From Octopus sinensis (Eukaryota): 64,000 nt of DNA. The notes under the pieces are model-generated. The model was given only the letters and a program-made list of their open reading frames with translations, was not told the DNA's origin and searched no databases. Location of the stretch: positions 94,488,001 through 94,552,000 of the forward strand of contig NC_043002.1 of NCBI RefSeq assembly GCF_006345805.1. Direction: 5' to 3'. The stretch's first letter is position 1. Each line of letters opens with the position of its first letter. The position numbers and the translations under genes are program-made. This document shows positions 1,321-63,030 of the stretch, one piece after another.

Positions 1321-2016
1321 AAGCAGCGAGTAGGCAGAATTGTTAGCACGTTGGTCAAAATACTTGGCGGCATTTCTTCCGACTCTTCACGTTCTGAGTT
1401 CAAATTACGCCTTGGTTGACTTTGCCTTCTGTCTTTTCGGGATCGATGAAATAAGTATCAATTGAGCACCGGGGTCAGTGTAATAAACTAACTCCCTCTC
1501 TATAAAAAAATTGCTGACCATGTGCTAAAATTTGAAGCCAGTATTATATTTGTGAAAGCGACGAAATGGTAGAATTTTTAGTGCGTCAAATAAAAAAATA
1601 CTTTGCGGTACCTGTTTCAGCTCTTTACTCTTTGCGTTCGAATCCCTCTAAGATCGACTTACCCTAACATCCTTTAAGAATCGATAAAATAAAATCTAGT
1701 TGAACTCAGGGGCGGGTGGGGTCGATGTAATCGACTAACCACCTCCGAAAAATTGCTAGCTTTGTGTTAAACTATTAAATCATTATTACTTTGTGTGCTA
1801 AGGCGGCGAGCTGTCAGAATCGTTAGCACACAGGACAAAATGCTTATCGGCATTTCGTCTGTCCTTACTGAGTTTTGAGTTCAAATTCGCCGAGGTCGAC
1901 TTTGCCTTTCATCCTTTCGGGGTCGATAAATGAAGTACCAGTGGAGTCCTGAGGTCGATGTAATAGACTTAAACGCTCCACCAAAATTTCAGGCCTTGTG
2001 CCTATAGTAGGTTATT
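1321..2016 (+). mobile_element. three tandem SINE-A copies, short-tail type (about 1321-1545, 1554-1785, 1800-2016)
   Basis: tRNA-like head GGCGAGCTGGCAGAA / GAGTTCAAATT, central GTCGACTTTGCCTTTCATCCTTTCGGGGTCGATAAA, tail AAATTTCAGGCCTTGTGCC; the same family recurs about 25 times in the window. Confidence 0.88.
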
Positions 2017-4827: not shown

Positions 4828-5353
4828 ATAATAATAATAATTCTTTCTACAATAGGCACAAGGTCTGAAATTTTGTGGAGAGAAAGGACGCAAGGCAAAG
4901 TCAACCGCAGCATCACATGATCTCAGAACTTAAATGCCACTGGGCATTAACGGTTCTGCCAGCTCGCTGCCTTAATATTAATATTAAACCTTTCTACTTT
5001 AGCTACAGGGTCTGAAAATAGGAAGGAGGGGCCAGTAGAATACATCAACAACAGTGCTTATTTTATCGACTCCTAAAGGATGAAAGACAGAGTCGACCTC
5101 GGTGGAATGATAACTCAGAACGTAAAGACGGACAAAATTTCATCAAGCATTTTGTTTTTACATTTTTGATTCTGCCGACGCGCCGCTTAAACAACAACGA
5201 CTAGAATAATAATCCTTTCTACTATAGGCACAAGGCCTGAAATTTTGGGGGAAGTGAGTAACTGGTAGTTAATTAATCGACCTCGGAAGGATGAAAGGCA
5301 AAGTTGATCGCTGCGGAATTTTGAACTCAGAACGTAGTGGAAGACAAAATACC
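4828..5353 (-). mobile_element. three SINE-A short-tail copies or fragments (about 4828-4972, 4985-5190, 5205-5353)
   Basis: Reverse-complement family motifs (GGATGAAAGGCAAAGTCGACC, CTCAGAACGTA, CTGCCAGCTCGC). Confidence 0.85.
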
Positions 5354-5572
5354 TATTTCTTTACTATCCACAAGGGGCTAAACACAGAAAGGACAAACAA
5401 GGACAGACAAACGGATTAAGTCGATTTCATCGACCCCAGTGCGTAACTGGTACTTAATTTATTGACCCCGAAAGGATGAAAGGCAAAATAGACCCCAGCG
5501 GAATTTGAACACAGAACATGAAGACGGACGAAATGCCGCTAAACATTTTGCCCGGCGTGTTAACGATTCTGC
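5354..5572 (-). mobile_element. SINE-A long-tail copy abutting a short-tail copy
   Basis: Tail TGTCCTTTCTGTGTTTAGCCCCTTGTGGATAGTAAAGAAATA joined to GGTATTTTGTCT. Confidence 0.88.
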
Positions 5573-8599: not shown

Positions 8600-8865
8600 A
8601 TACGTGTGTGAGAGAGACGGAGAATCTCTGTATTAAGACAAGTGTAGTAAAGACGTTGAGCTGGCAGAATCGTTTGGACGCCGGGCAAAATGCTTAGCAG
8701 TATTTCGTCCGTCTCCATGTTCAGAGTTCAAATTCCGCCGAGGTCGACTTTGCTTTTCAATCTTTCGGAGACGATAAAGTAAGGACTAGTTGAGTACTGG
8801 GATCGATGTAATCAACTTACTCCTTCCCCGAAGTTACTGGCTTTGTGTCAAAGTTCAAAACCACT
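8383..8865 (+). mobile_element. two SINE-A short-tail copies (about 8383-8500, internally deleted; about 8615-8865) separated by (TG)n
   Basis: Family head, central and tail motifs. Confidence 0.85.
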
Positions 8866-9838: not shown

Positions 9839-9947
9839 GGTCATGTAGATCAATGGACGATCTACTACTAACGATAAAATGTATATTGCTTTTAACCTAC
9901 AGCCTTGAACCTGCCTCAATAGATAGACAGGCAGATTCCTAATAAAC

Positions 9948-10011
<64 letters not shown>

Positions 10012-10031
10012 GGAGAGATAGATAGATGGAG

Positions 10032-10112
<81 letters not shown>
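9640..10112. repeat. (CATA)n (9640-9838) and (TAGA)n (9948-10112) microsatellites
   Basis: Direct reading; account for the IYLS/MYVC ORFs. Confidence 0.95.
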
Positions 10113-10113
<1 letters not shown>

Positions 10114-10135
10114 GTGCATAGGTGCAGGAATAGAG

Positions 10136-10370
10136 AAGACGGCGAGCTGGCAGAAATGTTATCACGCCGGGCGAAATGCGTAGCCGTATTTCGTCTGCCG
10201 TTACGTTCTGAGTTCAAATTCCGTCGTGGTCGACTTTGCCTTTCATCCTTTCGGGGTCGATAAATTAAGTACTAGTTACGCACTGGGGTCGGTGTAATCA
10301 ACTTAATCCCTTTGTCTGTCCTTGTTTGTCCCCTCTATGTTTAGCCCCTTGTGGGCAGTAAAGAAAAAAG
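10136..10370 (+). mobile_element. SINE-A long-tail copy
   Basis: Full head and central domain; tail TGTCCCCTCTATGTTTAGCCCCTTGTGGGCAGTAAAGAAA. Confidence 0.93.
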
Positions 10371-10797
10371 AGATAGAGAAGGTAAATAGCTACTGCGTAA
10401 CTTTCTAAGCTAATCTGGACATGTTATAGGTAACTTAAAATTGTAACATATATATATGGCCCCAGTATAGCCACAGTCTTAGGGCTGAAACGTATAAAAG
10501 AATATATATATATATATATATATGAATGTATGTGCGTGCGTTCTCGATACGGGTCGAAGAGTATAACATACGTTGATTAATAAGATTTGTTGAGTATCAT
10601 CCGTTTTATGTGACATATACAAACTGTATACATGCTTGATTCTAACTGCCTGTGCCAAGGTCTTTTCGCATTGCATTACTCTCGCATTCTCTTTATCTCC
10701 CTCTCTCTTACTCTCTCCATCTCTGCAGTTCTATTATTCAAGTAGAATGGTGCATATAAGTAGTGAAAACAATTTTGGGCGATACCAATACCTTTCA

Positions 10798-11119: not shown

Positions 11120-11342
11120 ATCTAATTATTGGTTTCGAGTTTTGACACAAGGCCAGAAATTTCGAGAGACGAGTAAGTCGATTACATCGACCCCAGTGCT
11201 CAACTGCGATTTATTTTATCGAACTTGAAAGTATGAAATGCAAAGTCGATTTCGGTGGAATTTGAACTCAGAACGTAAAGCCGGACCAAATATCGCTAAG
11301 CATTTTGCCTGGAGTGCTAACGATTCTGCCAGTTCGCCGCCT
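11120..11342 (-). mobile_element. SINE-A short-tail copy
   Basis: Reverse-complement family motifs. Confidence 0.88.
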
Positions 11343-14105: not shown

Positions 14106-14689
14106 AATAAAAGTTGCATTTCATCTTTCCAGGGATCGATGAAACAAAGTGCCACCCAGGTACTGGGGTTGATACTCGACTAAACTACTCCCTTTAAAAC
14201 TGTTGGCCTTGTGCCTAAATTAGAAAGCATTAAAATTATTTCTTTTGCAGGTTTTATACAATCACTTATCAGTAGTGTAATTATGGCCTGGATCTAGAGA
14301 AGATACATTAAGCAACTTGCATAGGGCGTTATATTATAGAAAGAAATATGTTTTGTACATATATGAATATATGTAAATTGCAGAGGTATATACAATATAA
14401 TTTAAATCAAGTGACGAAAGCCCACCTTTAATGTATGTTGCATTAATTGACGGGTACTCCTTAATTCATATTTAGACTGAGTGTACTGGCCAATACTACT
14501 TTGTATTCCCTGCAGATGATTTACCCAGGGTATTACTAAGCTGTCTCTCACGTCTGTTTCTTATCTCACCAAGGTCTTTATGATGAGTGGATCTATTTTC
14601 ATTCTAAGGTGCCCCGCCGTTTCAGTTTCTATCTCTAAGTATTGATATTTTCTTAATTTTCCAAAATCTTTTACTGATATAGTTTTGAA

Positions 14690-19840: not shown

Positions 19841-20415
19841 ATTCTTTATTATGATCACGTGGATCGAACATAGAGGGGACAGCTGAAGACATTACAAAAC
19901 AAAGATTGTGAGTTCGTTTGCAATAAGCGAATGATGCATTTACAATGAATGTATTTACAATTTTAATGAAATTTTTTTTACATTTTGGCCGGAGAGTCCA
20001 CCGGCTACACCGTACGGATTTACTATGTATTTAAACAGATTCTCTCACATCCAACTTCCTCACCACATCTTTCCAGCTTTTCTTGTATATGCTTCGCGAC
20101 AGGCGTCCTTTCTCCAGCCCTGTCTTGCTCTTCATATGGTATCTGAAATAGTAGAGCAAACCAGGCCCGGAGATAAAGGTTCTCGTCGCGACTCATTTCA
20201 TCCTCGTTTTTCTATATACACTCTTTCAGAACGGCAACTGTGCATAACAAACTGGCTTCCCCTTCCTTTGACAGTCCGGGTGGCGGTACAATCTTAATCA
20301 TACACTCAGCTGATAGCTCTATTCTTTCTAATTGTTCCGCGTAAACTATCAGGCCTGAAATCTCCACACAATGAACAAGGGCGTGCGGGACGATTTCCTC
20401 GTCTCACCCGGACCT
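19841..20415 (-). mobile_element. Tx1-clade LINE 3' fragment (ORF2 C-terminus, 3' UTR, tail)
   Basis: Reads DEEIVPHALVHC...IKIVPPPGLSKEGEASLLCTVAVLKECI, homologous to the 59-kb fragment; tail TGTCCCCTCTATGTTCGATCCACGTGATCATAATAAAGAA. Confidence 0.8.
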
Positions 20416-20429
20416 GGTATACATGCATA

Positions 20430-20666
20430 AGGCGGCGAGCTGGCAGAAACGTTAGCACGCCGGGCGAATTGCTTGGCGGTAATTCGTCTGCGTTACGTTG
20501 TGAGTTCAAATTCCGCCGAGGTAGACTTTGCCTTTCATCCTTTCGGGGTCGATAAATTAAGTACCAGTTACGCACTGGGGTCGATGTAATCGACTTAATA
20601 CCTATGTCTGTCCTTGTTTGTCCCCTCTGTGTTTAGCCCCTTGTGGGTAATAAAGAAATAGAAATA
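20430..20666 (+). mobile_element. SINE-A long-tail copy with 14-bp TSD
   Basis: TSD GGTATACATGCATA at 20416-29 and 20667-80. Confidence 0.95.
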
Positions 20667-21082
20667 GGTATACATGCATATAAGTGCGTTTGGGGAGTTG
20701 GAGACGAATAAGTGACAAGGTCTGTATATGTCTGAGCGTAGGCTTGCGCGATTTAAATTAACCCAGAATTTTAAGTGTCTGATAAATTAAAATTATAAAT
20801 AAAAATTATTTTAAAATATATAAACATGTACCAGTCTGTATTAATTCATTAATATCATCGAATTTATAATTCTTGGGATTGAAACGAATTTGTCAGTCAC
20901 TGAAAAAGCTAATAAGAAAAGAACTGAGAAAATACCTTTTATTCAATTATTGACATAAGTCTTTGTGATATGTCTTACCAGAGAGGTGTTTTGTAGTAGC
21001 ATCTTACATTGCTTCATCAGAAGCCTAAGGTTTTCACAGTAAAATTAACTCAACAGTTGTACAGTAACGAAATTTCTATACC

Positions 21083-21310
21083 TATTTCTGTACTACCCAC
21101 AAGGGGCTAAACATAGAGAGGACAAACAAGGACAGACAAACGGATTAAGTCGATTATATCGACCCCAGCGCGTAACTGGTACTTAATTTATTGACCCCGA
21201 AAGGATGAAAGGCAAAGTCGACCTCGCCGGAATTTGAACTCAGAACGTAGTGGAAGACGAAATGCGGCTACGCATTTCGCCCGGCGTGCTAACGATTCTG
21301 CCAGCTCGCC
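21083..21310 (-). mobile_element. SINE-A long-tail copy with 14-bp TSD
   Basis: TSD GAAATTTCTATACC (sense GGTATAGAAATTTC) at 21069-82 and 21311-24. Confidence 0.95.
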
Positions 21311-22125
21311 GAAATTTCTATACCATCGCAATGAATTCCCTCATTTGTTTCGCCTTCCTCGCTGAACAATATACCCCGGAGTATAAAACTAATTAAAATG
21401 TGTCATATTGTATCTTCAATGACCAAGGATTAATTCATATGCGCATAATAGCAGACGTTTCAATAGAACATGAAAAAAAAACAATACATTATGATGACTG
21501 TTCTGTTCTGAGCATTTAATTCCTTGTTATAGTGATCAATTATTGAAGAATTACTTCCAAAGAATAGCATTACTGCCTGCTGCTATCATTGTCATTTTCA
21601 CTACAACAATGATGGAAGACTAGCCGTGAGGCGAAATGTCCCCTTTCAGAATACGTCTTTTCTGATTCAATTCTACTGCGCAGTATTTTGGGCAAGTAAT
21701 TTCTGCTGCAATCTTTGAGTAACCAAATCGTTGTGAATGAAATTTGATAGATAGCATATGTACGGAATCCCGTCAGAGAGCACTTTCCTGTCCCTGCAAA
21801 AAAAGTTTGGAACATTTTTAAAATCAAATTTGTTATGCCGCACTACAATTCGATTTAAATATATACAATGTATATATTTGGGCATTTAATACTAAAATTC
21901 TAATTTTCAGGCCTATGTACCAAACTTTTGACCAAGTAATAATATATTGCAAATTAAATATAACTTTGGGCATTTGATATAAAAATTTTAATTTTCAGAC
22001 CTATGTTTCAAACTTTGCTGTAATATACCGACCATATTGACATTGAGTGTTTTGGGCAGAGTTCACTTTCCTGCGATCATTAGGTATGTCTCCTGTTTGA
22101 CAGCAGGTTATTTCTTTCTTTCCAG

Positions 22126-22249: not shown

Positions 22250-22780
22250 CCGCCACCACAACCACTGCCACCGCCACCGTCACCGCCGCCGCCACCGCCG
22301 CTATTGCCACCACCACTTCCATCACATTGGAACCACAGCCATTATTGCCATCCGCAAGAGTGGTTGATTGACAGCATTGCGAGTGTGTTAGACTAAATAC
22401 CTCGTTGTATTTGTGCTGGCTTTTTTACGTTTTGGATTCAAGTCCGGCTGAGGTCATTTTTACCTTTCATACCTCCGGAGTTGATAAAATAAAATACCAG
22501 TCATTTACGTGGATCTGTTTAATCGACTAATTCCTGCCTTTGAATATCAGGCCATGTGTCTGTGTGTTGAAAGCATAGCGGTAATCATGATTATTACCAT
22601 CACTATCACCGCCACCACAACGCCAACATCATACGACGACGACGACGACCACCACCACTACTACCCCTTCCCCCCCACCATTAGATTCACCTCCATTCAC
22701 TATCACTATGACCATCATCATCCGCAACTTCAACATTTTCGCCACCAATACCACTTTTTCTACTACAACGTCAACGCAAA
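22250..22780. repeat. (CCA/CCG)n and (CAC/GAC)n tracts around a SINE-A remnant (about 22390-22570)
   Basis: Direct reading. Confidence 0.8.
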
Positions 22781-41084: not shown

Positions 41085-41370
41085 TTCCTTCTCGTGCCAT
41101 GCCTGGCTCATAAGGGCTGGTTCCCCGGTTTCTTGGCGTATAGGTTCCCCACCTGGACGGGACGCCGGTCCGTCGCAGGTGAGCTGCAAGATGCAGGAGG
41201 AAAGAGTGTGAGAAAGTTGTGGCGAAAGAGTCAGCAGAAGTCTTGCCATTACCTTCTGCCGGAGCTGCGTGGAGCTTAGGTGTTTCGCTCATAAACACAC
41301 ACACCTGAGATTCGAACTCGCGATCCTTCGACCGCGAGTCCGCTGCTCTAACCACTAGGCCATGTGCCTC
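41085..41370 (-). mobile_element. SINE-C-related copy
   Basis: Head GGCACATGGCCTAGTGGTTAGAGCAGCGG...GAGTTCGAATCTC; tail ATGAGCCAGGCATGGCACGAGAAGG. Confidence 0.8.
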
Positions 41371-46290: not shown

Positions 46291-47739
46291 ATATATTTTT
46301 TTCTATATAAATGTACACTCAGCTTTTAAAATTGTTATAAATATAGCCATATACATATGAGCAGTAAATTATTGTTAGAATAATACAATAACATTGTTAT
46401 AGTTTACAAAGTAAAAGTAAGAAAAATAATTCTATTTTGATTTATATGGATCAATTCTGTAGAATAGAATTTTAGAAAACATTTCAAAGTTGGGTGTTTG
46501 ATACATATTTTCCGTCTGTTTTGTTTTTGTTCATCTATTTTTGTTGTCCAGAATATCACTTCTGTGTGTTGTTATTCTAGAATTTTCAATTGTACGTTTG
46601 TTAAGTGTATCGATTTGTTCGTTGTTTAATGACAACAGATGATACATAGGAAGATGAAACTGCAGCCGATTTCTAAGAGAGAGGGCTGTAACTGATCATT
46701 TATAATAATTTCATGTAAATCTGCTATACGCGCATGCACACACACACACGCATGCATTCACACATACACATACGCGTATATTGCTTGCACGTACAATCAA
46801 CCGCCCGCCTGCCTACATAAATACGTATATTCACCCGCATATATATATACGTAATATTTCCATATTTTCAAAGCTACATTATTGACAAATATTTCTAATG
46901 ATCTCATCGGAATTCACTTCATAAAGCTACGCCAAAACCTATCTCAGCCCCAAACTAATACCTTGACATTTTAAGAATGAAACTTTTTGTGTAACCTTCA
47001 GTAATAACGCACAATCGATTTCAAATATTATACATACCGTGCCCTCCTACGTGCATCAACATCCTTTATCATAAATCCACATGGTAGTTATTTTCCTGTC
47101 ATTGTCTTCATTTAAAAAAAGTTGTTAAGCAAAATCATAAATATTATAATTAGGAATTCTAGATTATTTTCGATGAGTCTATCTCATTTTTGTACCGATT
47201 TTATTTCTGGTAATTTATCAATTTTCAGTGCGATATATTCCTAGCTTCTTAAAACTATCTCTTTAATTAGTTAGTATCGAAACTGAAATGTTTTAAATGT
47301 TAAGTCCTTGTTTTGAGGGTTTTTTTTTTCTTTTTTCCAATGGGTAGCATAAAATCTGCAGGGAAATTTAATACAGGTTTGTTTTGACGACATTTATAGA
47401 CATACAAAGTAAATTAGACTTAAATAAATTTCAGCTTCGTGAAATGAATATGAAAATATTTTCAAAATATACAATTTATGAACTTTTATGAAGTATTTTG
47501 ATTGTATATAATTTTTAATCCATAGACATATTTCTTGCGTTTTATACTACCTCGTTAGTCAGTGTGAGGGTAATGTCTATGACAATTGTAGACCCTCTCA
47601 GGCAAGTGAAACTGATGCAGCTAATGTCCAGTGTAAACATTTACAGATCAATGTATATAGGGAGAATGAGGGATAAATGGAATTGAGATTGTTAAATCGG
47701 TGGATCCCATCTTATGAGTCAGTGGTATAAATTCTGATT

Positions 47740-47949
47740 AGACGGCGAGCTGGCAGAAACGTTAGCACGCCGGGTGAAATGCTCTGCCGCTACGTTCTGA
47801 GTTCAAATTCTGCCGAGGTCGACTTTGCTTTTCATCTTTTTGGGGTCGATTAAAAAAGGTACCAGTTACGCAGTGGAGTCGACTGAATAACTATGTCTGT
47901 CCTTGTTTGTCCCCTCTGTGTTTAGCCCCTTGTGGGTAATAAAGAAATA
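47740..47949 (+). mobile_element. SINE-A long-tail copy with 14-bp TSD (one mismatch)
   Basis: GGTATAAATTCTGA (47724-37) and GGTATAAATTCCGA (47950-63). Confidence 0.92.
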
Positions 47950-48296
47950 GGTATAAATTCCGAAAGTGTCACAAGAACAAAATCTTTTACTTTTGAAATA
48001 TTTGATAAAATGGATACGTTATACAATGGGCCACTGGCGGAATAAAGGCCACGACACAATATTTACCGCAAACATATCTTGGGAATACTTTCTCAAGAAA
48101 ACTTCAAACCGCTTAAATTATTGTTTAAATATTTAAATATTTAAAAAATGATCAAGAATTACAAATTTACCTAAAAGCATCCAAGACTAGACAGGGATGT
48201 TAAATTGAGTGGAGTGTCCTTCCTCTCATTCGAAACTGAAATCACCCAACAACCAGTTTTAACATAATAAAAATAATTTCTTAATTCATCAATGAC

Positions 48297-49489: not shown

Positions 49490-49827
49490 TTTGCTTGCTT
49501 CTGTCATTAGATTGCGGCCATGCTGGGGCACTGCCTTGAAGTACTTTTAGTCAAATGAATCGACCTCAGAGATAATTTTTTAAAGTTTGGTACTTATTCT
49601 ACCTTTCTTTTGTTGGTATGTTTACAGGGGCGTAAACATACCAACACCGGATGTGAGGGAGAAATACAAAGACACACAAACACACACACACACACACACA
49701 AATGAATATTTACACGACGAGCTTCTTTCCGTTTCCGTCTTTCAAATCCACTCACAAGTATTTAATTGCTCAAGGTTCCATGTAGTGGACTGAACCCCGA
49801 AAGATGTGTTTGGGAAGCAAGCTTCTT
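49490..49827 (-). mobile_element. SINE-B copy missing the first ~25 nt of its head
   Basis: Begins on the sense strand at AAGAAGCTTGCTTCCCAAACACATC, directly after the LINE tail. Confidence 0.85.
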
Positions 49828-50714
49828 TATTTCATTTTATGGCCATAAAGGCCTTTTACACAGAGGGGACAGCACATGGTGGGGACAAAAAACTAAACAA
49901 ATAAAATGAATGAAATTATACAATGAAAGATGAAATGAAGTCCCTCGGCCCTACATCCGAACGACTTTATTGAACCTGTTGCAGTACCATTTACATTACC
50001 CCTTGCAACTTGATACACCATTTGAACACAATTATTTACACAATAGTTAATCCACATCTTTTTCCAAAATGTCTATATTATATTTCTTTTAATATCCACG
50101 GACACTTTCTTCGGCATTGTGCTGGTGTCTATTTTTCAGATCACCCCTCACAGTCACAGTTTTATATATACCTATGCACTTTCTCCTGGTTCTCCAGGTC
50201 CATCAGCACACAATAATCGTTCTCGGGTAGACCCTTAATCCTGCTACATCCACCTTGACTATTCCGTCCCACAAACGTACTTCGTTATCCAGTTTCTCAA
50301 TCTGTCCATTGTACATAAATACGAATTTTTCATTACAGAGCAGGGATGGGTAGATTTGAGGCTACTGTGCGTTTGCAAAAGTTTTTTTGTCAGACTGGGC
50401 ATGGGAAGGGTTGGTGTCTGTAGGGAGTGGTTGGGGTATAGTGGGTGTGAGTGAATACCGGGTGGGTGTAGGTTGGGGGGAGTCATCTTTTATCATGTGC
50501 GTCTTTTTCCTCCTCTTTCTGCTCTTTTTCTCCACCATTTCTCAACTGGTGTTCGATTCTTCCTCCTCCTCAACACCGGTGCCTGTTTTCTTCTGTGGTT
50601 CCACCTCACGTATTTCTTCCTCCACAGGCAGTGTAACACCAACCACTTTTTCCTCATGTGTCTCTTTGTTCTTTTTTAGAGGTAGAGGACACTCCGCTGT
50701 AATGTGGCCTTTCG
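49828..50714 (-). mobile_element. Tx1-type element piece: ORF1 C-terminus joined to the 3' tail, no ORF2 seen
   Basis: KGHITAECP half-knuckle, E-rich then KKSRKRRKK tract; tail TGTCCCCTCTGTGTAAAAGGCCTTTATGGCCATAAAATGAAATA. Confidence 0.65.
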
Positions 50715-53039: not shown

Positions 53040-53380
53040 ATAATTTCTTAAATTAATTTCAAATTTGGGCACAAGGCCAGCAATTTCGGGGGAGGATCTC
53101 AGTACTCAACCGGTACTTATTTTATCGACCCCAAAAAGATGAAGGGCAAAGCTGATCTCGGAGGAATCTGAATTCAGATCATGAAGACTGGCGAGATGCT
53201 GCTAAGCAATTCGATGGACAAGTTAGCGATTTTGTCAGCTCGCTGGCTTTAATAATTTCTTACATTGAAACAAGTTCTCAAATTAGGAGAATGCAACTGT
53301 CGATAACATGGAGCTCAGTTCTTAACCGACGTCGACTTATTATTATGCTCGCGAGGATGAAAGGCTCATTTGACCAGAAT
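53040..53380 (-). mobile_element. SINE-A short-tail copy and remnant
   Basis: Family motifs. Confidence 0.75.
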
Positions 53381-53899: not shown

Positions 53900-54290
53900 C
53901 AAGTTTGCGAGATGGCAGAATCGTTAGCACGCCGGGCATAACGCTTAGTGGCATTTCGTCTGTCTTTAAGTTCCGAGTTCAAATACCACTGAGGTCCTTT
54001 TGGGGACGAATAAATACTATATGAATACTGGATCGATGTAATTAACTTATCTCCTTCCTCAAATTTTCAGGCCTCATGCTTATAGTAGAACGGATTTTGT
54101 CTTTAATCACAAAGAGGCAAATGGGCAAAACAAACATGTCAGGCAAAATACTTAGCGACATTTCGTCCGTCTTTACGTTCTGGGTTTAAATTCCACCTAG
54201 GTCGACTTTGCCTTTCAACCTTTCGGGGTCAATACTTCCCCTCTTCTCAAAAACTGGTAGTCTTGTGCCAAAATTTGAAACCATTATTAA
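53900..54290 (+). mobile_element. two SINE-A short-tail copies
   Basis: Family motifs. Confidence 0.82.
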
Positions 54291-54329
54291 CTTTAACTTC
54301 AAGTCACAACACCATATTATAGGAGCGGT

Positions 54330-56155: not shown

Positions 56156-58696
56156 CATAGCTTCCCAAAGTGGACGATATCACCGACCGGTGATATCGAC
56201 CACTTCAACTTACAGGTGGTCGATGGGCAAATAGTGGGCAATTCGAGACTTTGGTGGGCGATATGAGCAATTAGTGGGTGACAATGATTTTTTAGAAATT
56301 AAGTTTGCCTTTACTGATATCTCGGCATGCCTAGAATAAGGATGCACCTTTATCGATTTGACTGCTCGCTTAAAAAAGCGGACTTGTTTATCGATCGAAT
56401 ATTTTTGTTGCAATCATTGAAATGGTTGTCAGGCGTGCTAAAAATAGCAGCCAAATAGGCATAGGCCTTAAATCACACTCCACTACATTTTTTGCATAAT
56501 CGTATGAAGTCCCGTGTATAGAATTCAAATTCTCCAACATTTTCAGAAAACTACGGAAAATAAAAAAGTTATGAGGGGTTGTATGTCGTGCGTAATTCTG
56601 TGGTTTCATATCAAAACACAAGTGCTATTTTCAAGATGTTGACAAAATGTGCAGTTACGCACAAAATGACAGCTTTGAAATCGTGTTTCTTGACTGGGTG
56701 AAAATGATCAAACTTTAAATCTCTATAACTTTTTTAAAAACAAGTTGAATAACTCCAGCAATTTAGCTTGGAAAGATACATTAATGTGCCAAATTCTAAA
56801 ATTTTTGATAAACTTTAATTTTTGAAATGCTGGCAGCCAAACGAACTAGATCCGTATTTGCTCCAGTAAAGACGTGTCATCTGACTCTGCTCTATTGAAT
56901 ATCATACTGCCTTTCTGATACTGTCTATAGAAATTCATCTTCACATTTTCACTGTACAGAAAATTTGTCGACAGTAATAATTATTTATCGTTTGGATTTA
57001 TTCTCTCTCCTCAGAACTGTCAGTTACCAATGTGCCTTCTTTGCCATCAAACATTGACCAACGAAACAATGAAACCTTCACGCTTGAAGTATCACTTTGA
57101 GGCAAAGCATTCTGACAAGAAGGATAAGCCGTTATCATACTTTTTGCAACTGAGCTCCTCTTTCAAAAAGCAAATACAAACATTCAACACGCGACTCCAG
57201 GAAACTAGTAAACAGGAGAATGACGGGTTGATTGCATCGTACAACATTGTATTGCTTGTTACTAAGTCTGGGAAGTTTCACACAATTGGAGAAACGTTAT
57301 TTCGCCCAGTTATCGAAGAGGTTTTGTCAACCGTTATGCACGAAAAACGCGATAACATTATGAAGAAGATCCCACTTAGTATTAACAGAATTTCTCGACG
57401 CATCGATGAAATGGCCAACGATGTCAAACATCAGCTCATTAATATTCTCCAGTGTTCTGAATTTTCTATACAATTGAATGAATCAGCCGTTGTCGACGAT
57501 CAATGTTTGGTGATGGTATATATTCGGTATTTCAGCGAAGCCCTTCAACCTTGTGAGGAAATGCTGTTCGCAGAGAAATTGCTGCTTGATTCAAAAGGTG
57601 CAACTATTTTTCACACTCTCAAGTCTTTCCTTTTTTTAACATAATATTCCATTCAGTAATATTCTTGCCTGTGCATCTGATGGAGCCCCTTCGCTGATAG
57701 GAAGGTACAGACGTTTTTCATCTTTCCTAAATCGTGAAATTCCTCACCAGATACTAACTGCTTGGCACACTGGCAGTATTTAGTGGCAAAAATATGAACA
57801 GTAGATTGAATGATGCGCTACAGTTTGTTATCAAGACTGTGAATAAGTTGAACTCCAGTCCCTTGTCTGATCGAATTTTCAGTCAACTCTGTCTGAGAAA
57901 TGATGAGGACCATACTAAACTCTTATACCATACAGAAGTGCGGTGGTTGTCAAAAGGAAACTGTGTTTTACGCTTTGTTGAACTATTTTATATATCTTTT
58001 TCTTTGAAAATACTCCACTATCCAATTCATTGATGGCTGCAAGGTACGATATCTTTTTTCTATGTGATATATTCACAAAATTAAATTATTTGAATAAGTT
58101 ATTGCACGGAAACAGAAAAGCTCTCGTTGATTGTAAATTATTTATCACTACCTTCATTTCGAAATTGGTGTTGTTTAAGACTAACATTTCAAAACGTAAA
58201 TTCCATCAATTTCCATAACTTGATTCTTTGAAAGATGAATTGATTGATGAGGATTTAACTACATATTGCAACTATTTACAATCCTTGCACGATAGCATGG
58301 TGGAGCGATTTCAAGATGTTATTGTACTGAATATTCCAAATTGGTATAGCAATCCGTTTGAGGACGATGCAATCGATTGTGAGGATGATGTCCAGGAGGA
58401 ATTCATAGAATTACAAAATGACAATGACGCCACAATGCGATATCGCCGTAATGGAAAAGAAGGTTTGTGGTAACATCAGAGTATATTGAATTCCTACCCC
58501 AATTTGTGGAAACATCTGAAATTTCTTTTGCTTGCCTTCCCTACCTCATACCTGGTTGAATCTGGCTTTAACCATACTGGAACTTTATTTTCCTATAAAA
58601 GAATTGGATTGAATGTGATAACAGCGAGGAAACTCGCAGCTAAAGTTGACAAGTTTAAAACCGGATGTAACTGCACTAGCTGCATCGCACTGAGGC
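56156..58696 (+). pseudogene. decayed hAT (Buster/Charlie-type) transposon with transposase remnant at about 56985-58696
   Basis: 5' end CATAGCTTCCCAAAGTGG; peptides CLLCHQTLTNETMKPSRLKYHFEAKH, FSIQLNES, ACASDGAP, LLYHTEVRWLSKG, FPTSYLVESGF; several stops and frameshifts; right TIR absent. Confidence 0.92.
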
Positions 58697-59680
58697 TGCG
58701 GATCTCCAGATATTCTGTCTAAACAATGACCAGTGTCAAACGGGCCTTTCCACAGCTCGTCTCCCTCACTGAGCTACAGTCCTCGATCAAGAAGGGACCG
58801 AGACAGGGTGATTGGCATCTGGAATGTTGCCAGGCACTCACTGCCCTTTACCAGATGTGCAATTCGATCAGTGGAACATCTACTCTCGAGTTCTATAGAG
58901 GGTTAGGGGAGCAACGACGCACTCGGAGAGTCGCTAGGCGTCGAGCCGGGGACGATGGATAACTTCTAGAAATCCCTAGCTTGGCAATGCTACCGGTGGG
59001 GGGGGGGCACTGCTGGTATGACATAAACTCTACAGGGATGGAAGTACTGTCAGACGGACCTGCCCGAGATGCGCGCAGTGCGACAAAACCGTTCTGCACC
59101 CACTCGTCCAGTGTTCTTGCATTACTGACTTGTGGTGTTATGTTGAACAGCTGTTATCACGTGTAGGACGGATCCGGCCATCATCCGAGTCTATAGTGAA
59201 AATCGATCCACCGCCTTCCATTGGTCCGGAAGGGCAGGCAATTTTCCTCTGTCTGACAGCAGTAGCAAAAAAGGATGTATGGTGGACCAGGCTGAAAGGA
59301 CTGAAGGCAGATACTTTTCTCTTCGGCGAATCCCTCATCAACTTTTTCAAATTTCACTTGGAAAGGAAGATGCGGGTAGAGAGAGAAGTGCTGCCCCCAG
59401 TACATTTGCTAAAACGTGAGTGAATGGAGCGAAAATGGTCCGTGTGAGTGGATCTAGGCTAGCGAATTTGAGAAGGAGAAGGGTGCCCTCAAAGTGTTGA
59501 ATGGTTCGGGATTGGTGGAGTACCTGAGTCAACCCCAATTAGGGAACTTTTATTGTTATGTTGTTCTTGTTTGATATTATTGTTATAATTGCGTAGTCGG
59601 TGTTTTGTGTAAAAACCCCCACTGTCCACGTCAACTGTATTGTCCCCTATATGTGGGCCCAGGTGACTAATAAATGAAAT
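58697..59680 (+). mobile_element. Tx1-clade LINE 3' fragment (ORF2 C-terminal zinc finger, 3' UTR)
   Basis: MDNF*KSLAWQCYR..GALLV*HKLYRDG..TCPRCAQCDKTVLHPLVQC...AVAKKDVWWTR; ends TGTCCCCTATATGT...AATAAATGAAAT. Confidence 0.85.
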
Positions 59681-59695
59681 TATTATTATTATTAT

Positions 59696-59741
<46 letters not shown>

Positions 59742-59784
59742 GGTGGTGGTGGTGGTGGTGGTGGTGGTAGTAGTAGTAGTAGTT

Positions 59785-61141: not shown

Positions 61142-61693
61142 TTACCTCAAATTTTACACAGAAATATTTTATTTACTACGAATGCAAGGGTACAAGAGTC
61201 AATTCGAAGTAGAAAACTACTATAAAATACTTATAATATTATCTTGAAGGCATATGAGACATAAGGACACGTGGTGCAGAAAACCACATGTAATTATATC
61301 GTTGGCTAACGGGAAGTGTCTGCTATGGCTGCCGGAACAGCCAGAACACGTGATTTCATGTTGTATAACGTCTCCTACATACCCTCCCTTTTCACCTGTT
61401 AAACGTTTCTTCTTCATTCTCCAATTTACTTTTCTTTCTTTATATCCTCTCGTGAAAATTTGTTTCTTTTTTTATATCTCTTTGGGGACTATTGTCTAAT
61501 AAAGAATCATTTTTTTCATTATCCTGCGGAGTCGAATTTGCCTTTTATCATTTAGGGATCGTTAAAATAATGCATTAAGTACTGGAATAGGTGGTATCAA
61601 TCAATCCTCCTCTTCCAAACTGTTCACCTTGTACCTAAAGCAGAAACGATTATTATTATTATTATTATTATTGTTATTATTATTATTATTATT

Positions 61694-62245
61694 GAGTGGG
61701 TGAGCAGCGCATGTCAGCAAAGTGACACTGGGGTACAAATATACGAAGCCTAATATATCCACCATGACTACCGTCTGATAAGGGTACACCAGGCATATGC
61801 ATCACAACCATATGGGCATGACATGGTGATCTCATATCAACATAGACAGCGCATGACTTTGCAGGTGGCGCCCAGTTAGAATTTTCTTCAGTTCGAGTAG
61901 CCCATCCTGCTTAAAAGGTTCCTGAATAAGGTTTGTTCAAGGATATTGAACGAAACACCCATATTTCCAGAGGGGAATTATTCAAACCCCAAATATTTCC
62001 TCTCAACACATGGCTATGATCCTCCCCCACTAACTCTGCTCATGATCATAGATGCACATATCCTCAGCCACCAAGGGACATACGCAATTGGTTATGGTCA
62101 AACAACTGACAAGCAAATCTGTGGTACTGAGTAGAATATTTGCTGTAGCCCATCTTTTACACCAAGACAAAACATGTTCATTATAATACTTCTAATCAGT
62201 TAAGACCAGAAGCCATGAGAGTCATTGCCTGATACTGCACCAGGC

Positions 62246-62246
<1 letters not shown>
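61694..62246 (+). mobile_element. 553-bp non-coding element flanked by (ATT)n on both sides
   Basis: (ATT)n at 61650-93 and 62247-62300; truncated second copy at 14690. Confidence 0.8.
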
Positions 62247-62301
<55 letters not shown>

Positions 62302-62302
<1 letters not shown>

Positions 62303-63030
62303 AGACGGCGAGCTAGTAGAATCATTAGCATGCTTGAGTTCAAATTCTGCTGAGGTCAACTTTTCCTTTCATCCTTTCGGGTCCGATAAAGTAAGTATCA
62401 GTTGAGTACTGGGGTCGATGTAATCGATTTACCCCCTTCCCCGAAATTGCCGGCCTTGCACCAAAATTTGAAATCATTATTATTGCTTCATTTAAGGCTG
62501 CGACCAGGCAGAATCATTAGCACAGCGGACGAAATACTGTTAAGCATTTTCTCTGTCTCTAAATTATTATGCTCTCTCGCATTTTGTACGTCTTTACGTT
62601 CTGATTTCAAATTCTGCCGAGGTTGACTTTGTCTTTCATCTTTTTTGGGGTCGATAAAATAAGTACCAGCACTGGGGACGATATAATCGACTAGCACCGT
62701 GTCTTAAAAATTCCAGGCCTTGTGGCTAAAGTAAATAAATTATTTGTTCTAGTTCTTTCTTTACGTTTTGAGTCCAAATTCTGCTGCGGTCAGCTTATCT
62801 TTCATTACTCCGCAGACGATAAGTACGCAGTCAAGTACTGGGGTCACCAGTCTCACCTGAACCGCTTTCACCTCTAAATCTCTGGCTGGTGTGTCAAAAT
62901 TAGAAAAACGTTGAAGTAAACATCTTGCAGTATTCAGTTATTTCAGTTTACGCTCTAGGTTCGAATCCAGCAGGGGACAACACTAATTTGCATCCATGTG
63001 GAACCGATAATATAAGTATCACTGACGAAC
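62302..63030 (+). mobile_element. four progressively decayed SINE-A short-tail copies
   Basis: Family motifs at about 62302, 62495, 62760 and 62930. Confidence 0.8.

What the first reader, a model, noticed from the sequence alone, without database searches (positions are those of the whole stretch)
10327..10365. SINE tail shared with Tx1-clade LINEs, with a covarying stem-loop
Seen: long-tail SINE-A ends TGTCCCCTCT(A/G)TGT..GCCC-cttgt-GGGC..TAAAGAAA. The Tx1 piece at 19881-19841 (-) ends TGTCCCCTCTATGT..GATC-cacgt-GATC-ATAATAAAGAA. The piece at 49871-49828 (-) ends TGTCCCCTCTGTGT..GGCC-tttat-GGCC-ATAAAATGAAATA. The piece at 59641 ends TGTCCCCTATATGT..GGCC-caggt-GACT-AATAAATGAAAT (imperfect stem). 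A fixed 14-mer is thus followed by a 4-bp stem of different sequence with a 5-nt loop ending in U. Established: stringent LINEs recognise a 3' stem-loop and partner SINEs borrow it; most known partners are L2, CR1 or RTE. Inference: this SINE subfamily acquired a Tx1 tail by tail swap, since short-tail copies lack it.
Basis: partly seen in the sequence, partly recalled or inferred. Interest (0 to 1): 0.8.

Follow-up and report, generated by a model that had tools for sequence, protein, structure and literature searches.

The report
SINE and LINE share hairpin tail
An abundant short retroposon (SINE) in this octopus-like genome ends in the same roughly 45-base tail as several L1/Tx1-type LINE families, including a tiny hairpin whose stem changes in a compensated way. 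This fits the SINE borrowing the LINE's recognition signal to get copied: a new example of a well-known kind of parasitism.

Summary
The motif TGTCCCCTNTRTGT occurs 7 times in the window (0.12 expected): in 4 SINE copies and at 3 non-SINE 3' ends. Two of those ends (19841-20428 minus strand; 58734-59690 plus strand) run straight out of decayed ORF2 C-termini that are about 44% identical to each other. Full-length relatives fetched from public data encode an APE endonuclease, a reverse transcriptase and a CCHC zinc domain, with an ORF1 carrying a CCHC knuckle. Their best solved relative is human LINE-1 ORF2p. The Argonauta hians element has a tail about 90% identical to the SINE tail.

In unfitted MAFFT alignments, RNAalifold predicts only the 4-bp/5-nt hairpin. 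Of the stem cells, 88-93% are paired, against 16-48% when the partners are slid. Three of the four pairs show compensatory changes, and the loop ends in R-U.

Two points need correcting. The 14-mer is not fixed within the piece-C family. The "short-tail" SINE copies lack the 14-mer but carry the same hairpin (identical CTTGT loop, inverted stem) and end in (ATT)n like the LINEs, so both tails come from this LINE group.

Tx1 membership rests on indirect evidence; no RT phylogeny with reference elements could be run. This is a new member of a known kind.

The parts
10139..10372 (+). Long-tail SINE copy 1 (the finding). 14-mer 10327-10340, spacer tta, hairpin GCCC-cttgt-GGGC 10344-10356, A-rich end agtaaagaaaaaagag. 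TSD ATAGAGAAG at 10130-10138 and 10373-10381.
20430..20666 (+). Long-tail SINE copy 2. 14-mer 20619-20632, hairpin GCCC-cttgt-GGGT 20636-20648. 14-bp TSD GGTATACATGCATA at 20416-20429 and 20667-20680. It is inserted into the ORF2 remnant of LINE piece A, so it is younger than that LINE copy.
21083..21310 (-). Long-tail SINE copy 3. 14-mer (1 mismatch) 21111-21124, hairpin 21095-21107. TSD GGTATAGAAATTTC at 21311-21324 and 21069-21082.
47735..47949 (+). Long-tail SINE copy 4. 14-mer 47908-47921, hairpin 47925-47937. TSD GGTATAAATTC at 47724-47734 and 47950-47960.
5356..5572 (-). Long-tail SINE copy 5, with no recognisable 5' head. Its motif is decayed (tgtcctttctgtgt) and its stem is GCCC/GGAT. 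The 3' flank starts GGTAT.
19841..20428 (-). LINE piece A. Decayed ORF2 C-terminus (zf-RVT/CCHC region) at 20044-20427, 3' UTR, 14-mer 19868-19881, hairpin GATC-cacgt-GATC 19853-19865, end ataataaagaat.
49826..49990 (-). Piece B. Tail-bearing 3' end with no detectable coding part; the 5' limit is uncertain. There is an upstream partial copy of the motif (tgtccccaccatgt), 14-mer 49858-49871, hairpin GGCC-tttat-GGCC 49841-49853, end ataaaatgaaataaagaag.
58734..59690 (+). LINE piece C. 5'-truncated copy with an ORF2 C-terminal remnant at 58734-59451, 72% nucleotide identity to the full-length element L008 and about 72% amino-acid identity to its ORF2 (P0156). 14-mer 59641-59654, decayed hairpin GGCC-caggt-GACT 59656-59668, aataaatgaaat, then (ATT)n from 59681.
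1800..2013 (+). Example of the second SINE subfamily (tail-2a). Same head and body, tail ...ccaaaatttcAGGC-cttgt-GCCTatagtagg. TSD TTATTACTTTgTGTG. Other tail-2 hairpins are at 4855-4865(-), 5227-5237(-), 8839-8849(+), 11144-11154(-), 14205-14215(+), 22550-22560(+), 53068-53078(-), 62452-62462(+), 62716-62726(+) and 1516-1526(+). Further degenerate copies are at 1728-1790, 54040-54098, 54229-54291, 61595-61657 and 62854-62917.

Best explanation
The region is the 3' tail module of a group of L1-superfamily, Tx1-type LINEs of octopods, and the same module has been copied onto a tRNA-like SINE. From 5' to 3' the module has four parts. First come one or two pyrimidine-rich TGTCC(C/T)... motifs, the last being the 14-mer. 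Next is a spacer of 1-4 nt. Then comes a 4-bp hairpin with a 5-nt loop ending in R-U and an invariant C-G pair closing the loop. Last is an A-rich (A)ATAAA(G/T)GAAAT block, followed in most families by (ATT)n. Shown: the module sits at the end of LINE copies that run directly out of ORF2. It is kept among LINE families whose adjacent ORF2 C-termini are only about 44% identical. Its stem changes by compensatory substitutions. A full-length Argonauta LINE carries a tail about 90% identical to the long-tail SINE. SINE copies are flanked by 9-14-bp target-site duplications, and LINE copies are 5'-truncated; both are marks of target-primed reverse transcription. Inferred: the LINE ORF2 protein recognises this tail on its own RNA (stringent recognition), and SINE RNA carrying the tail is reverse-transcribed in trans. 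The older SINE subfamily (tail-2) carries a related hairpin tail from another lineage of the same LINE group. The younger long-tail subfamily arose by tail replacement, probably by template switching, onto the same body.
For: The motif is strongly enriched. Pieces A and C are contiguous with ORF2 C-terminal remnants that hit zf-RVT proteins and are 42-48% identical to each other. Full-length relatives were recovered: P0156 on L008 (ORF1 with a CCHC knuckle; ORF2 with Exo_endo_phos + RVT_1 + zf-RVT; tail TGTCCTCAATGTcctaGGCCctagtGGCCaataaatgaaatc(att)n) and P0168 on L010 from Argonauta hians (tail CGTCCCCTCTATGTtttGCCcttgtGGCtaataaaagaa...(att)n). The best PDB relative is human LINE-1 ORF2p at 1.2e-50, against R2 at 4e-22. 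On unfitted MAFFT alignments RNAalifold predicts only this hairpin. In A5 (6 LINE + 5 SINE tails) 93% of cells are paired, against 16-48% when slid, and 2 of 4 pairs have double changes. In A7 (8 LINE + 16 SINE tails) 88.5% are paired, against 28-46% when slid. There 3 of 4 pairs have double changes, and the covariation score of 0.616 against 0.18 is reached by 0 of 500 shuffles. In isolation the hairpin is the minimum-free-energy fold for 9 of 11 variants, at -2.5 to -7.9 kcal/mol. An empirical null from unrelated DNA gives a 2.8% hairpin rate. A covariance model finds 25 hits with E<0.05 in the window. It finds none better than E=0.15 among the 80 unrelated metagenome loci (L011-L090) included in the roughly 495-kb locus search, each of which contains the 14-mer. 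TSDs are exact. The long-tail subfamily is less diverged (83% against 69%).
Against: No functional test was done. A 4-bp stem is small, and folds of the whole tail are no more stable than shuffles (z between -0.8 and +1.7). The sequences are few and related: about 7 octopod LINE tails from about 4 families, and the SINE copies are not independent. I count only about 5-6 independent compensatory events. Pieces C, L010 and L136 have imperfect stems. No LINE with exactly the long-tail SINE tail and its end ...GAAATA was found in the same genome. Piece B has no coding part. Tx1-clade placement was not tested by phylogeny. The AATAAA block could serve 3'-end processing rather than RT recognition.
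Confidence: 0.78

Rival explanations
1. The tail is shared, but the hairpin and the AAUAAA block act in 3'-end formation or stability of the LINE transcript (a polyadenylation or termination signal) rather than as the RT recognition element. On this view the SINE keeps them only because the tail was acquired recently.
For: AATAAA-like words follow the hairpin in every LINE tail. The long-tail SINE subfamily is young, so passive retention cannot be excluded.
Against: The older, much more diverged tail-2 SINE copies still keep the hairpin, with compensatory stem changes and the same loop. They mostly lack an intact AATAAA. That argues for selection on the hairpin in Pol III-type SINE RNA, which needs no Pol II poly(A) signal. 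The elements end in (ATT)n or GAAATA, not poly(A).
Confidence: 0.1
2. There was no tail swap. The long tail and tail-2 are diverged versions of one ancestral LINE-derived tail that has co-evolved with its partner LINE inside a single SINE lineage.
For: Both tails have the same architecture: TCCCC, a spacer of about 9-10 nt, a 4-bp stem, a CTTGT loop, the return stem and an A-rich block. They share the preceding body up to CGACTTA(A/C)TCC. Sequence resembling the LINE 3' UTR (ATGTAATC) already lies in the shared body.
Against: The long tail is about 90% identical to the Argonauta LINE tail over about 38 nt, including the 14-mer that tail-2 lacks entirely. The stems differ at 3 of 4 pairs with no intermediates in the window. 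The long tail also has about 19 extra bases. Replacement from a LINE RNA is the simpler reading.
Confidence: 0.15
3. The LINE partner belongs to L1 proper, or to another L1-superfamily lineage, and not to the Tx1 clade.
For: No reference Tx1 sequence could be retrieved, and none of the relatives carries a name. The PDB comparison shows only L1-superfamily membership.
Against: ORF1 has a CCHC knuckle and no Transposase_22 domain. Ivancevic et al. 2016 tie that ORF1 type in animals to the Tx1 clade. The RT-based mollusc survey names no L1-proper clade among the 11 LINE clades it lists for bivalves, where Tx1 is the only L1-group clade, and octopus repeat annotations list L1-Tx1. The head-to-tail copies joined by (ATT)n resemble microsatellite-targeting Tx1 elements.
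Confidence: 0.2
4. The resemblance is chance or low-complexity similarity between unrelated repeats.
For: The motif is short and pyrimidine-rich, and the stems are only 4 bp.
Against: There are 7 hits against 0.12 expected. Similarity to the Argonauta LINE tail extends over about 45-70 nt. The covariance model gives no comparable hit among the 80 unrelated metagenome loci (L011-L090) of the roughly 495-kb locus search, each of which contains the 14-mer.
Confidence: 0.01

Closest known systems
UnaL2 / UnaSINE1 (eel) and the ZfL2 LINEs: stringent L2-clade LINEs whose ORF2p recognises a 3' stem-loop (Kajikawa & Okada 2002; Hayashi et al. 2014, PMC4176376)
   Same: LINE and SINE share a 3' tail. 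A hairpin lies shortly upstream of short terminal repeats. Stem sequence is free but pairing is kept, and loop bases are conserved. SINE subfamilies carry different tails.
   Different: The LINE clade differs (L1/Tx1-type with APE-RT-CCHC, not L2). The stem is much shorter (4 bp). There is an additional conserved 14-mer and an AAUAAA-like block. The terminal repeat is (ATT)n. No Rfam family matched the window at gathering thresholds or three LINE loci (L003, L008, L010) at E<=1. Recognition is untested here.
ZmSINE2/ZmSINE3 with LINE1-1_ZM (maize and sorghum), and SINEX-3_CR with L1-1_CR (Chlamydomonas): L1-clade LINEs with a conserved 3' hairpin shared with SINEs (Ohshima 2012/2013, PMC3472496, PMC3747384)
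   Same: The partner LINE is in the L1 superfamily. LINE and SINE share a 3'-end hairpin with compensatory mutations. Both are read as stringent recognition within the L1 group.
   Different: Those cases are plants and algae, not animals. The tail sequences are different and the 3' ends are (T)n or (A)n. In the 2013 survey of 58 SINE/LINE tail pairs no animal L1/Tx1 pair and no mollusc pair is listed.
SINEU with Tx1-Mar LINEs in crocodilians (Kojima 2015, PMC4494074)
   Same: SINEs are proposed to be mobilised by Tx1-clade LINEs. Target-site preference is shared or suspected.
   Different: That partnership was inferred from shared target preference and 5' heads. SINEU has poly(A) tails, and no LINE resembled its 3' half. 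Here the link is a shared 3' tail with a hairpin.
Microsatellite-specific Tx1-clade LINEs Kibi (TC)n and Koshi (TTC)n, and the crocodilian (TTCC)n/(TTTC)n families (Kojima & Fujiwara 2004, cited)
   Same: Copies are associated with one microsatellite, here (ATT)n. Head-to-tail LINE copies are joined only by the repeat (L010).
   Different: Target specificity is not demonstrated here. The (ATT)n may simply be the element's own terminal repeat. The long-tail SINE ends in GAAATA and prefers GGTATA sites instead.

Membership tests
SINE/LINE pair with a common 3' tail (stringent-type partnership) | The SINE 3' end is homologous to the 3' end of an autonomous LINE | tested here: met
   The long-tail SINE is about 90% identical over about 38 nt to the L010 (Argonauta) LINE tail. 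The motif and hairpin are shared with window LINE pieces A and C and with L008 and L003.
SINE/LINE pair with a common 3' tail (stringent-type partnership) | The tail contains a conserved RNA structure supported by compensatory changes | tested here: met
   88-93% of cells paired against 16-48% when slid. Three of 4 pairs have double changes. RNAalifold predicts only this hairpin.
SINE/LINE pair with a common 3' tail (stringent-type partnership) | The LINE protein recognises the tail and mobilises the SINE in trans | not testable with these tools
   Needs a retrotransposition or binding assay.
SINE/LINE pair with a common 3' tail (stringent-type partnership) | A partner LINE with the identical tail is present and contemporaneously active in the same genome | tested here: inconclusive
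   The window holds only three 5'-truncated LINE ends, with related but not identical stems. The closest tail is from another octopod genus. No octopus genome was searchable.
L1 superfamily of non-LTR retrotransposons | ORF2 with an N-terminal APE endonuclease, an RT and a C-terminal Cys-rich (CCHC) domain, closest to L1 ORF2p | tested here: met
   P0156 carries Exo_endo_phos, RVT_1 and zf-RVT. The PDB best hit is LINE-1 ORF2p at 1.2e-50 over residues 38-829, against R2 at 4e-22.
Tx1 clade | The RT domain groups with Tx1 references in a phylogeny (RTclass1 / Repbase) | not testable with these tools
   No named Tx1 reference was retrievable. Indirect support comes from the literature.
Tx1 clade | ORF1 of the RRM/CCHC-knuckle type rather than the Transposase_22 type | tested here: met
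   L008 ORF1 has RCYICGGLDHLKFFC and L010 ORF1 has CHRCKSVGHLRSSC. No Transposase_22 hit was found. The knuckle aligns with the zf-CCHC of P0185. The criterion is taken from PMC5203782.
Tx1 clade | Target-sequence-specific insertion | tested here: inconclusive
   Tandem LINE copies are joined by (ATT)n in L010, and tail-2 SINEs lie in or next to (ATT)n. Three of 4 complete long-tail SINE TSDs begin with GGTATA. Too few copies were seen to tell a target preference from the element's own terminal repeat.
tRNA-derived SINE (SINE2) | A 5' head with recognisable tRNA structure or A and B boxes | tested here: inconclusive
   ARAGORN and Rfam find no tRNA. A B-box-like GAGTTCAAATTCC is visible in the head. 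Octopus SINEs are annotated tRNA-Core/tRNA-Deu in the literature.
Rfam LINE 3' elements (curated RNA families, e.g. UnaL2 3' element) | A match to the family covariance model | tested here: not met
   No Rfam match in the window at gathering thresholds, and none in L003, L008 or L010 at E<=1 apart from a chance miRNA hit.

The most novel reading that the evidence does not exclude
Animal Tx1-type LINEs are stringent elements that recognise a minimal 4-bp hairpin with an N-N-N-R-U loop plus a flanking pyrimidine motif. Successive capture of such tails would then be what drove the very large, octopod-specific SINE expansion (over 10% of the genome), rather than the RTE or CR1 LINEs usually discussed. 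The long-tail subfamily would also inherit sequence-directed integration at GGTATA sites, perhaps through annealing of read-through 3' flank RNA to the target.
Probability: 0.35. Interest if true: 0.65.

Novelty: new member of a known kind. Interest (0 to 1): 0.5.

Why it matters
SINEs make up roughly a tenth of octopus genomes and have been linked to their rearranged gene order and brain transcriptomes. Even so, the open literature I could search names no partner LINE for them. A shared, structured tail points to L1/Tx1-type LINEs as the engine. It would be the first tail-sharing SINE/LINE pair from this clade in animals: the 2013 catalogue of 58 pairs has none, and the crocodilian SINEU/Tx1 link has no tail similarity. 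It also supports the idea that stringent 3' recognition is ancestral in the L1 group and was relaxed only in mammals and some plants. Finally, it gives a very small RNA element (13 nt plus flanks) that can be tested directly by compensatory mutagenesis.

Tried and rejected
(1) Naming the clade directly. Two further homology searches (P0156 alone, then a 16-sequence ORF2 alignment) and three cluster look-ups returned no relative named Tx1 or L1. The Kojima 2015 supplement with Tx1 RT alignments is not held.

(2) Finding more octopod tails in the public collections. A protein-pattern scan of metagenome contigs found nothing. The DNA pattern scan returned only unrelated chance matches, which I reused as a null. 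The viral and GTDB collections were not scanned because they hold no cephalopod DNA.

(3) Contig look-ups for relatives of LINE family A (P0010, P0013). These contigs stop before the tail. L136 (P0017) gives a decayed tail with an ambiguous stem.

(4) Distant (about 40% identity) relatives L005 and L007. L005 has TGGC-CATGT-GCCA about 40 nt before AATAAA, one base different from the tail-2 SINE hairpin. L007 shows no clear homologue.

(5) A larger structure. Whole-tail folds are no more stable than shuffles. A possible outer helix between UCURUGU and AUAAAGA is kept in some families and broken in L008 and L003, so I left it as inconclusive.

(6) A 13-mer match 5.1 kb upstream of piece B looked like a TSD. 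It is part of a SINE body repeated at both places.

(7) Rfam and tRNA scans found nothing.

Full report
OBSERVATION. The quoted sequences are all present. At 10327-10365 the window reads TGTCCCCTCTATGT-tta-GCCC-cttgt-GGGC-agtaaagaa. The pattern TGTCCCCTNTRTGT (up to 1 mismatch) occurs 7 times, against 0.12 expected from dinucleotide shuffles. Four hits lie in copies of one SINE (10327+, 20619+, 21124-, 47908+), and a decayed fifth copy is at 5356-5572(-). Three hits lie at non-SINE 3' ends (19881-, 49871-, 59641+).

WHAT THE ELEMENTS ARE. BLAST and alignment of the SINE against the window show more than 20 copies or fragments sharing a head and body, with two kinds of tail. The long-tail copies are bounded by exact target-site duplications of 9-14 bp.

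Pieces A (19841-20428, minus strand) and C (58734-59690, plus strand) run directly out of decayed reading frames. These encode the C-terminal Cys-rich region of a LINE ORF2. They are 42-48% identical to each other and hit proteins carrying Pfam zf-RVT. Piece B (49826 to about 49990, minus strand) has the tail but no detectable coding part.

A profile search with the C-terminal region led to full-length relatives.
- P0156 is 1111 aa and about 72% identical to piece C. It lies on a JGI contig, L008.
- P0168 is 1096 aa and comes from Argonauta hians, on locus L010.
- Both have Exo_endo_phos + RVT_1 + zf-RVT.
- ORF1 has a CCHC knuckle and no Transposase_22 domain.
- The best solved relative of P0156 is human LINE-1 ORF2p (1.2e-50 over residues 38-829). 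R2 proteins score far lower (4e-22).

The LINEs are therefore in the L1 superfamily. I could not place them by phylogeny with Tx1 references, because no named relative surfaced. Four lines of indirect evidence favour Tx1:
- In animals, CCHC-type ORF1s go with the Tx1 clade (PMC5203782).
- An RT-based survey of molluscs names Tx1, and no L1 proper, among the 11 LINE clades it lists for bivalves (PMC10294476).
- Octopus repeat annotations list L1-Tx1.
- In L010 the LINE copies stand head-to-tail, joined only by (ATT)n. This recalls microsatellite-targeting Tx1 families.

THE TAIL. Seven octopod LINE tails were collected: A, B and C from the window, plus L003, L008, L010 and L136. They share one layout: one or two TGTCC-type motifs, a 1-4-nt spacer, a 4-bp stem with a 5-nt loop, then (A)ATAAA(G/T)GAAAT, and in most cases (ATT)n.

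The intact full-length L008 has a perfect GGCC-ctagt-GGCC. The imperfect GGCC/GACT of piece C is therefore decay of an old copy.

The Argonauta tail is CGTCCCCTCTATGTtttGCCcttgtGGCtaataaaagaa. It is about 90% identical to the long-tail SINE over about 38 nt and has the same CTTGT loop. This is the closest candidate partner lineage.

The 14-mer is well conserved between families A, B and L010 and the SINE, but it varies within the C family (TGTCCTCAATGT, TGTCCTTATACGT).

COVARIATION. MAFFT alone put all the hairpins in the same columns.
- Alignment A5 (6 LINE + 5 SINE tails): RNAalifold predicts this hairpin and nothing else. Of the cells, 93% are paired, against 16-48% when the 3' partners are slid. 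Two pairs show double changes: G-C/C-G/A-U at one and C-G/U-A/U-G at the other.
- Alignment A7 adds the second SINE subfamily and L005 (24 sequences): 88.5% paired against 28-46% when slid. Three of 4 pairs have double changes, and the loop-closing C-G is kept in 23 of 24 sequences. The covariation score of 0.616 against 0.18 is reached by 0 of 500 shuffles.

The sequences are related, so I count roughly 5-6 independent compensatory events, not 24.

Isolated hairpins fold as predicted in 9 of 11 variants, at -2.5 to -7.9 kcal/mol. As an outside control I took 109 unrelated metagenome sequences that contain the 14-mer and a downstream ATAAA. Only 2.8% have such a hairpin abutting ATAA, against 4 of 6 LINE tails (P about 8e-6).

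A covariance model built from A7 finds 25 hits with E<0.05 in the window, six of them not used to build it. It finds nothing better than E=0.15 among the 80 unrelated metagenome loci (L011-L090) of the roughly 495-kb locus search, each of which contains the 14-mer.

THE OTHER SINE SUBFAMILY. After the shared body they read ...TCCCC-(about 9 nt)-(A/T)GGC-CTTGT-GCC(T/A)-A-rich-(ATT)n.
- The loop is identical to that of the long tail.
- Three of the four stem pairs are inverted or exchanged, with pairing kept.
- The outermost pair itself covaries between two sub-variants (A-U or U-A).
- The terminal (ATT)n matches the LINE C/L008/L010 ends.
- A distant LINE relative, L005, carries TGGC-CATGT-GCCA, one base away from this hairpin.

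Both SINE tails therefore come from this LINE group. The long-tail copies are more alike (83% mean pairwise identity) than the tail-2 copies (69%). One long-tail copy is inserted inside LINE piece A. A later tail replacement on the same SINE body is thus the best reading. Gradual co-divergence cannot be excluded from one window.

MECHANISM. Shown: shared tail, conserved and covarying hairpin, TSDs, and 5' truncation. Inferred from established work on stringent LINEs (UnaL2, ZfL2; PMC4176376): ORF2p binds the tail of its own RNA to start target-primed reverse transcription, and SINE RNA bearing the tail is used in trans. Also inferred: tails are exchanged by template switching (discussed for MetaSINEs).

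COMPARISON WITH WHAT IS KNOWN. Tail sharing and 3' hairpins are textbook for the L2, CR1 and RTE clades. In the L1 group they are documented in maize and sorghum and in Chlamydomonas. The 2013 catalogue of 58 pairs has no Tx1 partner and no mollusc pair. The crocodilian SINEU/Tx1-Mar link rests on shared targets, with poly(A) tails and no tail similarity. Later mollusc SINE studies found CR1 and L2 partners, or none. I found no paper naming a partner for octopus SINEs. Repbase notes could not be checked. I therefore file this as a new member of a known kind, of moderate interest.

LIMITS. The evidence comes from one 64-kb window plus a handful of contigs. No genome-wide consensus, RT tree or experiment was possible. 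The window's species is not known. An octopod origin is inferred from the SINE type and from relatives in Argonauta hians and octopus-derived contigs.

Noticed in passing
20416-20429/20667-20680; 21311-21324/21069-21082; 47724-47734/47950-47960; 3' flank of the copy ending at 5356(-): Three of the four complete long-tail SINE copies have TSDs that begin with GGTATA (GGTATACATGCATA, GGTATAGAAATTTC, GGTATAAATTC). The flank of the decayed fifth copy (5356-5572, minus strand) begins GGTAT. Only copy 10139-10372 differs (ATAGAGAAG). This suggests a sequence-directed integration site, or annealing of read-through RNA to the target.
   Followed up: partly
window 62240-62480, 4833-4895(-), 5205-5267(-), 61595-61700; L008 5155-5226; L010 150-190 and 6165-6180: Tail-2 SINE copies and the LINE C/L008/L010 families all end in (ATT)n. 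One SINE (head at about 62302) sits inside an (ATT)n array. Tail-2 TSDs start with ATTA-like words. It is unclear whether (ATT)n is a target or the element's own terminal repeat.
   Followed up: partly
L010 1-190 and 6100-6260; L005/L006: Full-length LINE copies stand head-to-tail. In Argonauta (L010) the tail plus (ATT)n of one copy is followed directly by the 5' UTR (gcttcctaacgg...) of the next, on both sides of the copy. The distant relative on ERZ25071366 is also tandem, with a period of about 6.5 kb.
   Followed up: partly
window 10333-10340 with 10357-10364, and the equivalent positions in LINE A, L010 and SINE 20619: The 3' half of the 14-mer (UCURUGU) can pair with the AUAAAGA after the hairpin, giving an interrupted outer helix in several minimum-free-energy folds. 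Piece C shows a C-G to A-U change in register, but L008 and L003 break the pairing. Inconclusive.
   Followed up: partly
window 57030-58700 (+); L001 488-571: LINE piece C lies immediately 3' of a hAT/FAM200-like transposase remnant (ORF 57030-57644 with a BED-type Cys/His motif, and a C-terminal dimerisation-like region up to about 58700). Contig L001 joins the same LINE and hAT sequences in a different order.
   Followed up: no
window 9945-10110 and 59681-59760+: A long (GATA)n array lies about 25 bp upstream of the 5' TSD of SINE copy 1. A compound (ATT)n(AGT)n(GGT)n array follows LINE piece C.
   Followed up: no
window 41300-41370 (+): The reverse complement of a different tRNA-like SINE head (ggcacatggcctagtggttagagcagcggactcgcggtcgaaggatcgcgagttcgaatc...) produces a chance GGCCATGTGCC match. 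This is a second, unrelated SINE family in the window.
   Followed up: no
P0185 (Metynnis hypsauchen): A fish relative of these LINEs encodes ORF1-like ZCCHC3-type RNA-binding domains and a CCHC knuckle, fused in one reading frame with APE-RT-zfRVT. This hints that the vertebrate ZCCHC3 domains are related to the ORF1 of this LINE group.
   Followed up: no
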